Virus record (IMG/VR): IMGVR_UViG_3300029984_000001
Span: 199,572-263,571 of that record
DNA: 64,000 nucleotides
Strand: one strand, 5' to 3'
Position 1 is the first letter of the stretch, and each line of letters opens with the position of its first letter. Below the pieces are notes generated by a model. That model searched no databases. It was not told the origin of the DNA and was given only the letters and a program-made list of their open reading frames with translations. Below are positions 11,617 through 20,511 of the stretch, piece after piece. The position numbers were made by a program, and so were the translations under genes.

Positions 11617-13536
11617 ATGAAAATCGTAAAGAATAATGTAATTAATAAGGAAGCAACGAGATTATTTCAATCAGAGACATTAAAAGGATTAGCAGAATCA
11701 ATAATAACTTCAGCAGGACCACAAGGATCAGGTACTAAAATAATATTACATTTAGCAAACGATCCAGAGAGTCCTAATAGAAATGTACCTATAGTTAAAT
11801 ATAGTAAAGATGGTCATAGTATCTTAAGTTATATATCTCATTGTGATAATGGAATGCTTTGCAACTCTGTATGTAACGATGTTTATGAAATGACTACTTA
11901 TGTAAAGAAGAAAATTGGAGATAATTCAACCGCTACTGTATGTATGGCTTCACGAATATTTGATAATCTTGTTAAAGTAGAAACCGATACAAAACTTCCT
12001 CCAAGAGAAATAATCAAACAATTTAAAAAAGCTGTTGAAATGATTACAGTTAGAGTAAAAGAAAAAACACAAGAATTTACTCCTGAAGAAGCTTATAATA
12101 TTGCATACATATCTTCTAATGGTGATGAAGAAGTTGCAAATAACATAAAACAAATTTACGAAGAATTTGGTAAAGAAGTATATATAGATATTGGAATTTC
12201 GAATGATGAACAACATAAAATGAAAATAATGGATGGTATGAGTATTAGTACTGGATACAATAGTCCTGCTTATCGAAATGATTTGCAAAAGAATATTGCA
12301 TCTATTCCAAAACCAAGAATATACTATTTCCAAAATATGATTGATACTCCTGCTCAAATTGCATTATTAGCAGCAATTGTTGTAAAAAATATAACAGATC
12401 CTTACAGAACTAATAAATTAGAAAATGTAATTCCTACAGTAATATTAGCACCACAATTAGCTAATGATGCTATCGTTGAATTAAATGAAGTTATTAGACT
12501 TATGCAAATGTATGATAAACCTGAACATATTAAGAACAAACCACCGTTATTAATTGTTACTGGGATATTTGAAGATGAGGCCACAGATGATATTGCTAGA
12601 TTGTGTGGATGTCCTCCTATTAGAAAATATCAAAGTTTAGAACAACTAGAAAAAGATAAAGAATCAGGTAAAGCTCCTACTACTGAAACTATTGTAGATA
12701 ATTGGTATGGAAGTGCTGATGTAGTTGTAGCTGATGCTGTTAGTACTAAATTTATTAATCCATTATTAAAATATACAACTAAAGGTGAAGAGAGAAAAAG
12801 AGTATGTGAACAAAATAAAGAGAAATTTGTTCCTGCTGAAGATGATAATGAAGAAATCTTCAGTGCTCATTATAATTCATTAGTTACTGCATTAGAAGCT
12901 CAATTGGAATTAGAAATAAATAATAATGCTACTATGGATATTACAGGTTCATTAACTAGAAGAATCAATTCATTAAAAGCTAAAGTCGTAGAATATCAAG
13001 TTGGTGGTATTGCAATAGCTGATAGAGATTCTTTAAAAGATTCAGTTTGGGATGCTATAAGAAATTGTAGATCAGCGGCTAAATCTGGTGTTGGATTAGC
13101 ATGTAATATGGAAGGTTATTTTGCTTGTCTAGAAATATTGAACAATACAAAAGCAGATGATGATTCTACAGTTATCAAATTTGTAGAAATGATTCATGAT
13201 TCTTATGTAGAATATATATCTTCATTATATGAATTTACATTTGGTATTGATAAAGATGAATGTTTAAGATTATTAGAAACTAATTCTAGAACAAATGGAA
13301 TAGTAGATTTATCTCAAGGATATGATAAAGAAACTGTAGATAAGGTGATATACAATACAAAAATTAAATCATCTATAAATGCAGATATAGTTACATTAGA
13401 AGCTTTATCTAAAATATTATCTTTAATGATGACATGTGCTCAAACTCTTATACCAGAACCATTATTAGATTCATATACAGCATTTGTAGATAATAGAAAA
13501 ATTCAAGATAAATTAGTTAAAACATGTAGACTATAA
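11617..13536 (+). CDS. groEL: Phage chaperonin (GroEL-like, divergent)
   Basis: SAGPQG, SKDGHSIL, IGDNSTAT (GDGTTT equivalent), AYISSNGD, DAIRNCRSAAKSGV. Confidence 0.9.
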   Translation: MKIVKNNVINKEATRLFQSETLKGLAESIITSAGPQGSGTKIILHLANDPESPNRNVPIVKYSKDGHSILSYISHCDNGMLCNSVCNDVYEMTTYVKKKIGDNSTATVCMASRIFDNLVKVETDTKLPPREIIKQFKKAVEMITVRVKEKTQEFTPEEAYNIAYISSNGDEEVANNIKQIYEEFGKEVYIDIGISNDEQHKMKIMDGMSISTGYNSPAYRNDLQKNIASIPKPRIYYFQNMIDTPAQIALLAAIVVKNITDPYRTNKLENVIPTVILAPQLANDAIVELNEVIRLMQMYDKPEHIKNKPPLLIVTGIFEDEATDDIARLCGCPPIRKYQSLEQLEKDKESGKAPTTETIVDNWYGSADVVVADAVSTKFINPLLKYTTKGEERKRVCEQNKEKFVPAEDDNEEIFSAHYNSLVTALEAQLELEINNNATMDITGSLTRRINSLKAKVVEYQVGGIAIADRDSLKDSVWDAIRNCRSAAKSGVGLACNMEGYFACLEILNNTKADDDSTVIKFVEMIHDSYVEYISSLYEFTFGIDKDECLRLLETNSRTNGIVDLSQGYDKETVDKVIYNTKIKSSINADIVTLEALSKILSLMMTCAQTLIPEPLLDSYTAFVDNRKIQDKLVKTCRL

Positions 13537-17369: not shown

Positions 17370-17849
17370 ATGATAGAGAATGCAAATATGAAATGTTTTG
17401 GAAAATGGTCTTTTGAAGATATGGGATGTATGCAATGTACTCACGAATCTGATTGTTCTGCTAATAAAAGAGAAAATGAATTAGCTTATAAAAGAACTAT
17501 AAAAGATTTTAGATGTTGGAATTGTTCTGATATAATAAAATGTAACCAAACAATTAAAAATTGTTTTGGTTTTATTAATAGAACATGTGATAATAGATGT
17601 AAATGTTGGTATGAATGTCAACGTAACCAATATTTAATATCAATAAAGGTTGAATGTATAAAACCAATCATAATGAAGACTGAGCATTATGAACCTTATA
17701 ATTTTATTGAAGGGAATACTTATATATTTAGTATTACAAAAGATGGTATGTTATTATCAGGTGGAACTTATTATGATATAATATTAGGTAGAAAGAAACC
17801 TTATAATAAATTAAACATCTTTGATAAATATTTTAAAATAATTGAATAA
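17370..17849 (+). CDS. Cys-rich hypothetical protein
   Basis: Repeated CFG-x-C-x2-C-x5-C type clusters. Confidence 0.7.
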   Translation: MIENANMKCFGKWSFEDMGCMQCTHESDCSANKRENELAYKRTIKDFRCWNCSDIIKCNQTIKNCFGFINRTCDNRCKCWYECQRNQYLISIKVECIKPIIMKTEHYEPYNFIEGNTYIFSITKDGMLLSGGTYYDIILGRKKPYNKLNIFDKYFKIIE

Positions 17850-17851
17850 TT

Positions 17852-17882
17852 AATAAGAGGGATTTATCCCTCTTATATTTTA
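17852..17882 (+). terminator. Rho-independent terminator
   Basis: ataagaggga-ttta-tccctcttat followed by T tract. Confidence 0.75.
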
Positions 17883-17916
17883 TGTCAAAATAATTTGTAA
17901 GAGTTCGATCCTATAG

Positions 17917-17935
17917 TTGTATATTATACTAATGA
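17917..17935 (+). promoter_or_regulatory. Early-type promoter
   Basis: ttgtatattata ctaa tga. Confidence 0.65.
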
Positions 17936-17998
17936 ATAATAAAAGAAATTATCAAAAATTAATATAGAATTATATAATCGAAAGGAAAGAATGTAAAA

Positions 17999-18641: not shown

Positions 18642-18920
18642 ATGAAAAAAGAAATAGTAATAATGATAGAGAATATAGAAGAGGAATATAAAATAAGAAT
18701 GGTAGATCTTTTTCTAGAGATTGAAGATATGGGATTTGAATGTAAAAAGATTATTTTATCACGTATTGATATTAATATATGGATAGGTAAAAAAGATTCT
18801 ATATCTATATTATGTAATTATTTAAAAGATCATGGATGTAATATTATTCAGATCAAAAATATATTAAACGAATGGGGATTAGACGTATTAGAAAAAATAC
18901 TAAAATCTAAGGAGAATTAA
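18642..18920 (+). CDS. Small helical paralog 1
   Basis: LCNYLKDHGCNIIQIKNILNEW motif. Confidence 0.7.
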   Translation: MKKEIVIMIENIEEEYKIRMVDLFLEIEDMGFECKKIILSRIDINIWIGKKDSISILCNYLKDHGCNIIQIKNILNEWGLDVLEKILKSKEN

Positions 18921-18921
18921 C

Positions 18922-19185
18922 ATGGGAGGAAAACGAATAGATGAAAAAAAGAATGATATCGAATTAGAGTTTTCTGATAGATTAGATTCTTTATATTTAA
19001 ATTTAGGACAGGTAGCTAGAATGTGTAGGTTAGCTGCATTAAATAATAACAAAGAAAATATATTTATAGGAGAAGGTAATTTTACTAACTTCTGTAAACA
19101 ATTAAGAGAAGCAGGATATAATTATATAGAGATTAATAAATATTTAGTTAAATGGAAAAATCAACTTTTTACAAAAATAAAATAA
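18922..19185 (+). CDS. Small helical paralog 2
   Basis: FCKQLREAGYNYIEINKYLVKWKN motif. Confidence 0.7.
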   Translation: MGGKRIDEKKNDIELEFSDRLDSLYLNLGQVARMCRLAALNNNKENIFIGEGNFTNFCKQLREAGYNYIEINKYLVKWKNQLFTKIK

Positions 19186-19198
19186 AGGAAAGGATAAT

Positions 19199-19534
19199 AT
19201 GAAATATAATAAGTATGAGGATAAGGATATTGATGCTAAGATATTAACGAAAAAGACTATGATATTGTTTGAGTATTTGTCAAATGGAAATGATTTAAAG
19301 GAGGTATTACCAGTCGTTAATAATTTTATATCTTTATGTAATGTAGTCTCTACATCTCAACGTTTTGATGAATTTTGTAGAAATGTAGATGAATCTGTGA
19401 TATCAGATGATTCTATATTAAATCTTTGTTTATACTTGAGAAGAAATTGTTATACTCATGATACAATAAAAATAATATTAGAACAATGGAAAAATGAAAT
19501 TAATGAAATAAAATATAGGAGTGAATTATTATGA
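19199..19534 (+). CDS. Small helical paralog 3
   Basis: LCLYLRRNCYTHDTIKIILEQWKN motif. Confidence 0.7.
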   Translation: MKYNKYEDKDIDAKILTKKTMILFEYLSNGNDLKEVLPVVNNFISLCNVVSTSQRFDEFCRNVDESVISDDSILNLCLYLRRNCYTHDTIKIILEQWKNEINEIKYRSELL

Positions 19535-20460
19535 AAAAAGAATTAACAATCGAGGATAAAAAAATATTAAAGAAAGAAGTTGAAATAGAGGTTAAATATA
19601 AATATGTTTTTGATTCTTTTAAAAATATTATATATAATCTTATAAACTCGCCATATTTAAACGATAAAGATTTTTCAATAAATACTTTTACAAATGATAT
19701 AAGAAATAGAAATCATAGAGACAAAGAATTAATAGAATTTATTAAATTTTTAAGCAGTATAAATAAAAAACAAAAAGAAATAAAAGAAATTTTAATAGAT
19801 TGGAAAGATAGAGTAGATAGTTATGAAAATGAATATACATGTGATCATCTTCCTTCTGATAGTTTAATCGAAATAAAAGATAATATATTTTTCTGTGAAA
19901 GATGTGGTAAAGTATTTGATATAATTCCACAATTACCTAATGAAGATATTAATAATTTCGTTGACAAGTTTAGTTCATTAATAAATGATATGAAGGGACA
20001 AGGTTATTATGATCCAGAAATAGGATTAATTTCAAATAGATATGGTGGTAAAGGAGTTATTTCTAGTATAACAGAAGATTCTATATTATCTCCTCATACA
20101 AATGATGGTACTCCAGTTGAAATAAACATGTCACTAAAACAAATTATGAACAGAATGACAGATGAAGAGTTTATAAAATTTACTGAAAATCTTTTCTTAA
20201 AAAATATAGAGGTTCGTAAATCTAGAATATTAAAAGAAAATTTACCAAGTTTTGAAATTGGTGAGAATAAAAATACAGAATATATACATGATCCTAATTC
20301 TCTAATAGCAAAATGTCTTCATGTTGAATTTCATAAAGATGGAAATAAAATGAATATGACCAAAATAAATGAAGATACATATAAATGTAATATATGTACA
20401 GAAGAGATATCTAGAGATATGTATAAATTATTAAAACTACGTTTTGAAACTAAAAGATAA
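19531..20460 (+). CDS. Mosaic protein: paralog domain, two CxH...CxxC Zn ribbons, and an embedded RNAP beta fragment
   Basis: FIKFLSS...IKEILIDWKD; CDH..CERC and CLH..CNIC; SNRYGGKGVIS...PHTNDGTPVEI...NRM. Confidence 0.75.
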   Translation: MKKELTIEDKKILKKEVEIEVKYKYVFDSFKNIIYNLINSPYLNDKDFSINTFTNDIRNRNHRDKELIEFIKFLSSINKKQKEIKEILIDWKDRVDSYENEYTCDHLPSDSLIEIKDNIFFCERCGKVFDIIPQLPNEDINNFVDKFSSLINDMKGQGYYDPEIGLISNRYGGKGVISSITEDSILSPHTNDGTPVEINMSLKQIMNRMTDEEFIKFTENLFLKNIEVRKSRILKENLPSFEIGENKNTEYIHDPNSLIAKCLHVEFHKDGNKMNMTKINEDTYKCNICTEEISRDMYKLLKLRFETKR

Positions 20461-20511
20461 ATGATTGGGTGTATAAACACCCTTTTATTTTTTTATCTTT
20501 TTCTTCAGTTG

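What the first reader, a model, noticed from the sequence alone, without database searches (positions are those of the whole stretch)
20023..20157. A 45-aa piece of the RNAP beta active-site region embedded in a small early Zn-ribbon protein
Seen: GLISNRYGGKGVISSITEDSILSPHTNDGTPVEINMSLKQIMNRM lies between two CxH...CxxC modules. Established: it parallels the conserved beta segment GDKxxxRHGxKGVI...P...DGTPVDIxLNPxxVxSRM; the GDK lysine is lost here. It is far too short to be a polymerase. Inference: either (a) a protein mimic or decoy for factors that bind RNAP, or (b) a captured stretch of the phage's own beta gene acting as a DNA decoy for, or scar of, homing endonucleases that target conserved RNAP motifs.
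Basis: partly seen in the sequence, partly recalled or inferred. Interest (0 to 1): 0.75.

Follow-up and report, generated by a model that had tools for sequence, protein, structure and literature searches.

The report
RNA polymerase fragment inside zinc-ribbon protein
A small accessory protein of a giant peat-soil phage really does contain about 45 residues copied from a phage RNA polymerase active-site region, but the piece cannot polymerise and looks like a captured, slowly decaying gene fragment rather than a working mimic or decoy.

Summary
Window 20023-20157 encodes aa 165-209 of a 309-aa ORF (19531-20460, +), between two CxH...CxxC modules. A profile built from 120 homologs of the phage's own non-virion RNAP beta C-half matches aa 167-224 at 30.9 bits (E 2e-9 over the phage's 506 ORFs). 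Generic profiles are weak: Pfam Rpb2_6 gives 16.4 bits, below its cut-off.

The genome is a 263.6-kb, 26% GC jumbo phage from peat, distantly related to AR9. Both of its beta-like genes keep their own GDK...KG motif, so this ORF is not a missing subunit. The fragment lacks the GDK lysine, the first barrel half and NPGQ, so it cannot be catalytic.

Only two homologs were found. One keeps ISNRYGxKGxIS but lost the rest and its first zinc module. The other keeps PHxNDGT...RFNM but lost the first half. dN/dS is about 0.4-0.9.

Best reading: a captured beta gene fragment in a fast-evolving zinc-ribbon ORFan. Its 3' edge lies within a few codons of where intervening sequences split beta genes in two other phages, and this phage's RNAP genes are accompanied by HNH endonuclease genes. 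A break-repair origin is therefore plausible. The mimic and DNA-decoy ideas have no support.

The parts
17917..17928 (+). Promoter-like motif TTGTATATTATA at the head of the transcription unit that ends with the 309-aa ORF
   Evidence: There are 11 exact copies in the genome, all on the + strand, against about 1 expected. They share extended flanks. The motif resembles the annotated AR9 early promoter core. Function is inferred only.
19517..19521 (+). Shine-Dalgarno AGGAG, 9 nt before the ATG at 19531
   Evidence: Read directly from the sequence.
19531..20460 (+). 309-aa ORF (P0001), a lineage-restricted protein with two zinc ribbons, last gene of the unit
   Evidence: ORF list. The identical protein occurs on at least 24 contigs from peat metagenomes. 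Only one homolog (P0002) was found among 1.8 billion representative proteins; the other hit there (P0003) is a 36-aa identical fragment of this protein.
19840..19905 (+). Zinc module 1: C104, H106, C122, C125
   Evidence: Seen in the sequence. Kept in L014. Three of the four ligands are lost, with a frame break, in L003.
20023..20157 (+). Beta-like segment, aa 165-209; the profile alignment runs over aa 167-224 (20029-20202)
   Evidence: Clade beta HMM 30.9 bits, E 2.1e-9. Pfam, PHROG and NCBIfam hits cover the same residues. Extension of the homology upstream is not supported by a shuffle test.
20033..20060 (+). 28-nt stretch identical to the phage's own beta gene at genome 118502-118529
   Evidence: Exact-repeat scan and codon comparison.
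20314..20397 (+). Zinc module 2: C262, H264, C286, C289
   Evidence: All four ligands are invariant between this ORF and P0002, although the residues between them diverge at dN/dS about 0.9.
20467..20495 (+). Intrinsic-terminator hairpin with T run that closes the unit
   Evidence: Terminator scan: 4 sites found against 0.2 expected. Conserved in L003.

Best explanation
The segment is a genuine fragment of a phage-type multisubunit RNA polymerase beta subunit. It covers the C-terminal half of the beta double-psi beta-barrel, from just after GDK to N-R-M. It is fused in frame into a fast-evolving accessory protein with two zinc ribbons.

The protein is not a polymerase and is not a subunit of either phage RNAP. 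The fragment most likely arrived by illegitimate recombination or break repair that copied about 135 nt of a beta gene into an accessory-gene island. The event happened in the common ancestor of three closely related peat jumbo phages.

Since then the fragment has been diverging, with different parts eroding in different lineages. The protein is still kept as a translated ORF, and its zinc ligands are the most stable feature. If it has a function, that function is probably carried by the zinc ribbons, which bind protein or nucleic acid in a probably early, host-takeover type operon. The beta-derived stretch would then serve as a loop or linker, not as a copy of the active site.

Shown: the homology, the lack of catalytic features, the redundancy with intact beta genes, the narrow distribution, and the weak and uneven constraint. 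Inferred: the capture mechanism and the present role.
For: Homology and donor type:
- Clade-specific beta profile E 2.1e-9.
- The run ISNRYGGKGVIS equals the consensus of this clade's beta.
- Other phage betas combine that run with MPHT.DG.P.E, as this segment does.

Not catalytic and not a subunit:
- GDK is replaced by IGL.
- There is no first barrel half; the upstream test failed.
- There is no NPGQ.
- Both own beta-like genes keep GDK...KG.

Narrow and unstable family:
- Among 1.8 billion representative proteins, only P0002 was found as a homolog; the second hit (P0003) is an identical 36-aa fragment of the protein itself.
- The L003 ortholog keeps the first half of the motif only, and its zinc module 1 is destroyed.
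- The L014 homolog keeps PHLNDGT...RFNM only and stops two residues later.
- Relatives at 70% and 54% identity (of the neighbouring virion structural protein) have no homolog at that position.

Weak constraint: dN/dS is 0.37 in the central block and 0.92 in the C-terminal block. The DNA flanking the gene downstream is about 94% identical between the two phages.

Still a gene: SD, a 309-codon ORF in a 26% GC genome, and a promoter-like motif to terminator unit.

Origin context:
- Intervening sequences interrupt beta genes within a few codons of the fragment's 3' edge in Bacillus phage Internexus (Intron_gpI E 4e-6) and in IMG/VR locus L046.
- HNH genes split the own beta'-like and GyrB-like genes, and one abuts the beta gene.
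Against: - The 10-residue core is perfectly identical to the own beta and 29/30 at DNA level. That is the best match among 69 beta genes and is more than simple neutral decay predicts. It hints at selection on this loop or at a recent short conversion.
- Central-block dN/dS below 1 and the retained long ORF show that some constraint exists, so the fragment may contribute to function.
- The family has only three members, and one is a 708-bp contig, so claims about decay rest on few sequences.
- No expression data could be found.
- No confident structure was obtained.
Confidence: 0.55

Rival explanations
1. Protein mimic. The beta-derived loop is displayed between two zinc ribbons. It competes with the real beta for a partner, such as the beta' barrel during assembly, a factor that enters the catalytic channel, or a host sensor of phage RNAP.
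For: The core ISNRYGGKGVIS is identical to the own beta and is largely kept in L003. R170 and K174, counterparts of the RNA-contacting basic residues of beta, are retained. The central block has dN/dS 0.37. The gene sits in a probably early unit.
Against: The L014 homolog has lost exactly this core, and L003 has lost the other half. In real RNAP the stretch is part of a buried barrel at the active centre, not an exposed docking surface (established knowledge, PMC7598289). The segment is predicted disordered, with pLDDT 23-31. No partner has been identified.
Confidence: 0.12
2. Product of homing. The ORF descends from an ectopic homing or break-repair event that copied the 3' end of a beta exon, together with intron or endonuclease sequence, into the accessory island. 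The zinc ribbons would be remnants of an endonuclease DNA-binding domain.
For: Similarity ends at N-R-M, and the L014 homolog stops two residues later. Internexus carries a group-I-like intron with a zinc-finger ORF right after the equivalent N-R-L-N. L046 carries a roughly 390-nt insert three residues earlier. HNH elements crowd this phage's RNAP genes. An intron endonuclease that targets an RNAP gene of a competing jumbo phage is documented (PMC11620839).
Against: No nuclease domain appears in Pfam, PHROGs or NCBIfam. There is no similarity to the Internexus intron ORF. Rfam finds no intron in the window. A zinc ribbon also lies upstream of the fragment, where a beta exon would be expected. 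The boundary may simply mark the end of a conserved block.
Confidence: 0.2
3. DNA decoy or target-site mimic. The 28-nt copy of the beta motif DNA titrates, or is used against, a homing endonuclease that recognises the beta gene.
For: A 28-nt exact match to the own beta gene. The own beta is the closest of 69 beta genes at 29/30. P of at least 9 of 10 identical codons given codon usage is 0.016. An HNH gene lies next to the beta gene.
Against: Unrelated beta genes reach 28/30 through codon bias alone. The L003 ortholog differs at 5 of 30 positions. No mechanism is evident by which a single extra site would shield an essential target. Identity stops abruptly outside the conserved peptide.
Confidence: 0.03
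4. Genuine RNAP component: a further split piece of a beta subunit needed by one of the two phage polymerases.
For: Jumbo phage RNAP subunits are split into several polypeptides (PMC7598289). Homology to beta is significant.
Against: Both beta-like genes already contain this motif intact. The fragment lacks GDK and NPGQ. It is absent from relatives that have the same RNAPs and is degenerate in the two that have it.
Confidence: 0.02

Closest known systems
C-terminal beta-like subunit of AR9-type non-virion RNAP (the AR9 beta gene at 73267-75159; this phage's gene at genome 117376-119544)
   Same: Shares the loop ISNRYGGKGVIS and the following strand pattern [DN]G..V[ED]I......NR. The match to the family profile is significant.
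   Different: Only about 45-58 of roughly 720 residues are present. GDK, the first barrel half and NPGQ are missing. The fragment is flanked by zinc ribbons that beta does not have, and it falls below Pfam's cut-off.
Mobile introns and homing endonucleases in jumbo phage RNAP genes (PhiPA3 gp210 nicking the PhiKZ gp178 gene, PMC11620839; the proposal that split RNAP genes arose through intron mobility, PMC7598289)
   Same: The same gene class and the same kind of site. Conserved catalytic motifs of RNAP genes are interrupted in relatives and in this genome.
   Different: The ORF itself has no nuclease domain and no ribozyme, and it lies 100 kb from the beta gene. The link is circumstantial.
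Half-size double-psi beta-barrel peptides that fold by homodimerisation (designed, bioRxiv 10.1101/2021.02.22.432383)
   Same: A beta-beta-alpha-beta half barrel of about 43-46 residues, the size of the fragment here.
   Different: Those peptides were engineered from a VCP barrel with a symmetric sequence. Here no fold or dimer is predicted (the complex job gave no verdict).
Mosaic phage ORFans formed by illegitimate recombination in accessory-gene islands (general knowledge)
   Same: Lineage-restricted, located in a variable island between conserved genes (primase and a virion protein), evolving fast, with gene content that differs between close relatives.
   Different: The captured piece comes from the catalytic core of an essential polymerase. 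I found no prior description of that; the literature check was limited.

Membership tests
RNA polymerase beta subunit / Rpb2 domain 6 (PF00562) | Score at or above the curated gathering cut-off (23.4 bits) | tested here: not met
   16.4 bits, E 0.005, aa 167-221 on profile positions 227-280 of 373. NCBIfam rpoB gives 15.3 bits against a cut-off of 896.
RNA polymerase beta subunit / Rpb2 domain 6 (PF00562) | Local homology to the barrel's C-terminal half (R.G.KGV...DG.P.[DE]I...R) | tested here: met
   Clade profile 30.9 bits, E 2.1e-9 over 506 ORFs. PHROG 3295 E 7e-5.
RNA polymerase beta subunit / Rpb2 domain 6 (PF00562) | Catalytic-centre GDK lysine and the following NPGQ motif | tested here: not met
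   GDK aligns to I-G-L, and N-R-M is followed by TDEE instead of NPGQ.
RNA polymerase beta subunit / Rpb2 domain 6 (PF00562) | Complete double-psi barrel (first half with the ED motif) and the remaining beta domains | tested here: not met
   No other region of the ORF matches the 731-position beta profile. The upstream 40 residues score no better than shuffles; 670 of 1000 shuffles reach the score.
Homing endonuclease (HNH, GIY-YIG, LAGLIDADG, VSR-like) | Recognisable nuclease domain | tested here: not met
   No such family found in Pfam (E up to 10), PHROGs (E up to 1) or NCBIfam (E up to 1). The same libraries do find HNH ORFs elsewhere in this genome.
Group I intron | Ribozyme core detectable by the Rfam covariance model | tested here: not met
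   No Rfam hit in the window at gathering threshold. The more sensitive E-value mode, which found the Internexus intron at E 4e-6, was not run on the window.
Zinc-ribbon proteins | Two knuckles supplying four Cys/His ligands, and membership of a curated zinc-ribbon family | tested here: inconclusive
   Two CxH...CxxC sets are present, and the second is invariant in P0002. All curated zinc-finger or zinc-ribbon hits fall below their cut-offs. Metal binding was not tested.
Subunit of the phage nvRNAP or vRNAP | Conserved in all relatives that encode the enzyme, and needed to complete a subunit | tested here: not met
   Both beta-like genes are complete at this motif. There is no homolog at the syntenic position in L016 or L018. 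Only one homolog was found among 1.8 billion proteins.

The most novel reading that the evidence does not exclude
The beta-derived half barrel is functional. Held between two zinc ribbons, it pairs with a second copy, or with the beta' barrel of the phage or host polymerase. That would rebuild a barrel-like module that binds nucleic acid or blocks polymerase assembly. It would be a natural example of a free-standing half double-psi barrel recruited from a polymerase active site as a regulator or anti-polymerase weapon.
Probability: 0.08. Interest if true: 0.75.

Novelty: new variant of a known kind. Interest (0 to 1): 0.36.

Why it matters
The locus is a clean, datable case of a piece of an essential enzyme's catalytic core being copied into an accessory gene. 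Three related genomes show successive states of erosion.

It lies in a phage whose polymerase genes are accompanied by HNH endonuclease genes (one splits the beta'-like gene, one abuts the beta gene), and its boundary is close to a recurrent insertion site for intervening sequences in beta genes. It is therefore a useful natural record of how endonuclease-driven breaks may seed new genes in jumbo phages.

If the fragment proved functional, it would be a new type of polymerase-derived regulator. As the evidence stands, it is a curiosity of gene birth and decay, not a new system.

Tried and rejected
- tblastn of the ORF against 50,697 GenBank phages: no match.
- Word-index search of 5.8 billion proteins: only the protein itself.
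- ESM Atlas: nothing above noise; stored model pLDDT 0.48.
- AlphaFold2 with the 2-sequence alignment: mean pLDDT 39.9, and 23-31 over the segment, so no fold search was run.
- Homodimer test of aa 140-240 with complex prediction: no verdict, score 0.00, not evidence either way.
- Upstream extension of the beta homology (a DKFSSLI against dklfsnii look-alike): rejected by shuffle test.
- Paralogy of the N-terminal 100 aa with the three upstream small ORFs: not supported, E 2.7.
- Profile of the three family members against PDB sequences: the beta hit disappears and only sub-threshold zinc-finger hits remain.
- Population variation: all contigs carrying the gene are 100% identical in DNA, so within-population dN/dS is impossible. 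Laying four peat runs added no variants in the ORF.
- RNA runs: none was listed.
- More family members were sought in IMG/VR and JGI metagenomes: only identical copies and ordinary beta genes turned up.
- Bacterial-donor idea: the PH..DGTPV half looks bacterial. It was dropped because phage betas with NRYGGKG plus MPHT.DG.P.E exist.
- Rfam group I model on this genome's own HNH inserts: no hit at E up to 0.01.

Full report
**What is there**

The window is the last 64 kb of a 263,571-bp viral record with 25.8% GC. The finding lies in ORF 19531-20460 (+), 309 aa.
- The ORF has an AGGAG ribosome-binding site 9 nt before its ATG, which overlaps the stop of the preceding ORF.
- It is the last gene of a unit bracketed by terminator-like hairpins at 17853-17876 and 20467-20482.
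- The unit is headed by a promoter-like motif, TTGTATATTATA, at 17917. That motif occurs 11 times in the genome, always on the + strand, against about 1 expected. It resembles the annotated AR9 early promoter core.
- The quoted peptide is aa 165-209.
- Two CxH...CxxC modules flank it, at aa 104-125 and 262-289.

**Is the resemblance real?**

Generic profiles give weak hits on the same residues:
- Pfam Rpb2_6: 16.4 bits, E 0.005, below the 23.4 cut-off.
- PHROG 3295: E 7e-5.
- NCBIfam rpoB: E 0.003.
- Bacterial beta chains in the PDB: E 0.4-0.9.

I collected 120 homologs of the phage's own 722-aa beta C-half and built a profile from them. Against all 506 ORFs of the genome it hits only the beta gene and this ORF, at aa 167-224 with 30.9 bits and E 2.1e-9. 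The homology is therefore real.

It does not extend upstream. The preceding 40 residues score no better than shuffles.

In register, GDK corresponds to I-G-L, and N-R-M is followed by TDEE instead of NPGQ.

**What the genome is, and whether the piece is needed**

The beta gene and the downstream virion protein place the phage as a distant relative of Bacillus phages AR9 and PBS1, Staphylococcus phage S6 and Yersinia phage phiR1-37. All of these are jumbo phages with two multisubunit RNAPs (PMC7598289).

Both beta-like genes of this phage carry their own GDK...KG motif. The ORF is therefore not a missing piece of either enzyme.

**Which donor?**

The first half, ISNRYGGKGVIS, equals the consensus of this phage clade. 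Bacteria have RHGNKG at that position.

The second half, PHTNDGTPVEI, looks bacterial. However, other phage betas combine NRYGGKGV with MPHT.DG.P.E (L028, L040, L043). A phage-type donor therefore explains the whole stretch.

At DNA level, 28 nt are identical to the own beta gene.
- Given identical residues and this genome's codon usage, P of at least 9 of 10 identical codons is 0.016.
- Over the 30-nt core, the own beta matches at 29/30, the best of 69 beta genes. Unrelated genes reach 28/30.

This is a weak signal of shared ancestry or a short conversion. It is not evidence for selection at DNA level.

**Distribution and evolution**

An exhaustive HMMER search of 1.8 billion representative proteins found one homolog, P0002. 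P0002 lies on a 708-bp contig, L003, whose downstream flank (terminator and start of the virion protein gene) is about 94% identical to the window.
- It keeps ISNRYGSKGTISEINP but not the second half of the motif.
- Its first zinc module has lost three ligands and the reading frame.

Through the neighbouring virion protein gene I reached three more relatives.
- L014 (81% identity in the virion protein) carries a 151-aa ORF one gene upstream of the virion protein gene, with a 191-aa ORF in between. It has the same CxH...CxxCG.F module and linker, then FPHLNDGT...IITPLIGRFNM, then a stop. Here the second half of the motif is kept and the first half is lost.
- L016 (70%) and L018 (54%) have no homolog at that position.

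Nei-Gojobori estimates against L003:

| Region | dN | dS | dN/dS |
|---|---|---|---|
| aa 120-181 | 0.23 | 0.64 | about 0.37 |
| C-terminal zinc block | 0.55 | 0.59 | about 0.92 |
| Start of the neighbouring structural gene | 0.07 | 0.19 | |

All four ligands of the C-terminal zinc block are kept despite its high dN/dS.

All copies of the gene in the peat metagenomes are identical in DNA, so there is no population signal.

The picture is a young, narrow, fast-evolving family. The zinc scaffold and an open frame are maintained, while the beta-like motif erodes differently in each lineage.

**Structure**

- ESMFold (Atlas) gives pLDDT 0.48.
- AlphaFold2 gives 39.9 overall and 23-31 over the segment.
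- A homodimer test gave no verdict.

Nothing can be said about the fold.

**Endonuclease context**

- In Bacillus phage Internexus, the orthologous beta gene is interrupted right after ...NPLGVFNRLN. The insert is 1.3 kb, carries a zinc-finger ORF, and has a full-length sub-threshold match to the group I intron model (32.5 bits, E 4e-6).
- In IMG/VR locus L046, a roughly 390-nt ORF-less insert splits the gene between ...NMCG and VYGRENGGQ.
- Both sites lie within about four codons of the point where the similarity ends in this ORF, and where the L014 homolog stops.
- In this genome, the beta'-like gene (AADFDGD) is split by an HNH ORF.
- The GyrB-like gene is split by an HNH_3/NUMOD4 ORF.
- The two inserts share exact repeats of 29-58 nt.
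- A third HNH gene lies directly after the beta gene.
- An intron endonuclease that attacks a competitor's RNAP gene is documented for PhiPA3 and PhiKZ (PMC11620839, PMC12908238).

This makes an origin by endonuclease-triggered break repair plausible. It does not prove it. The ORF has no nuclease domain or ribozyme.

**Verdict**

The best-supported explanation is a captured fragment of a phage beta gene inside a rapidly evolving zinc-ribbon ORFan, non-catalytic and not part of the RNAPs (confidence about 0.55).

Rivals:
- A homing-derived origin is a plausible refinement (0.2).
- A functional active-site mimic is possible but unsupported (0.12).
- DNA decoy (0.03) and true subunit (0.02) are unlikely.

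Novelty: a new variant of a known kind, namely a mosaic ORFan with a captured fragment. Interest is moderate to low unless function is shown.

Noticed in passing
G000:C1:63085-65918 (outside the window): The phage's beta'-like gene is split. The parts are a 396-aa ORF, an HNH endonuclease ORF at 64518-65303 (phrog_59, E 2.7e-22), and a 148-aa ORF carrying the catalytic AADFDGD motif.
   Followed up: partly
G000:C1:101072-104654 (outside the window): A GyrB/topoisomerase-like gene is split by an HNH_3 + NUMOD4 ORF at 102893-103522. This insert shares exact 31-, 58- and 29-nt repeats with the insert in the beta'-like gene, so one intron-like element family occurs twice. The Rfam group I model does not detect it.
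   Followed up: partly
G000:C1:119594-120448 (outside the window): A free-standing HNH endonuclease gene (phrog_953, E 2.8e-52) lies directly downstream of the nvRNAP beta C-half gene.
   Followed up: no
window 17917-17928, plus 10 other genome sites: The promoter-like motif TTGTATATTATA has long conserved flanks (TGTAAA about 10 nt upstream, TGAAT downstream). There are 11 exact copies, all on the + strand. It resembles the AR9 early promoter core. Read depth peaks at 17822-17995 in all four peat runs laid.
   Followed up: partly
window 18642-19534: Three tandem small ORFs (92, 87 and 111 aa) are clear paralogs of one another (E 1e-14 to 1e-39). Relatives carry different numbers of such ORFs. 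Contigs in two runs skip 18655-19324, with only 21 letters on the shorter side of the joint, so this is weak evidence.
   Followed up: partly
L013 (Bacillus phage Internexus, MW749003.1, 229644-232991) and L046 (IMGVR_UViG_3300028886_000046): Beta C-half genes are interrupted by intervening sequences at nearly the same conserved codons: after NRLN in L013, and between NMCG and VYGRENGGQ in L046. The L013 insert carries a 325-aa ORF with three zinc-finger modules.
   Followed up: partly
G000:C1:9888-15116 (outside the window): A 1742-aa ORF has a very divergent beta-type barrel (EEGYEDS ... TGDK...LKGVVKG...ARM) at its extreme C-terminus. It is presumably the virion RNAP beta-like protein fused to a long N-terminal region.
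   Followed up: no
window 11617-13536: A 639-aa ORF has a borderline Cpn60/TCP-1 chaperonin match (34.2 bits against a cut-off of 34.3, E 1.6e-8).
   Followed up: no
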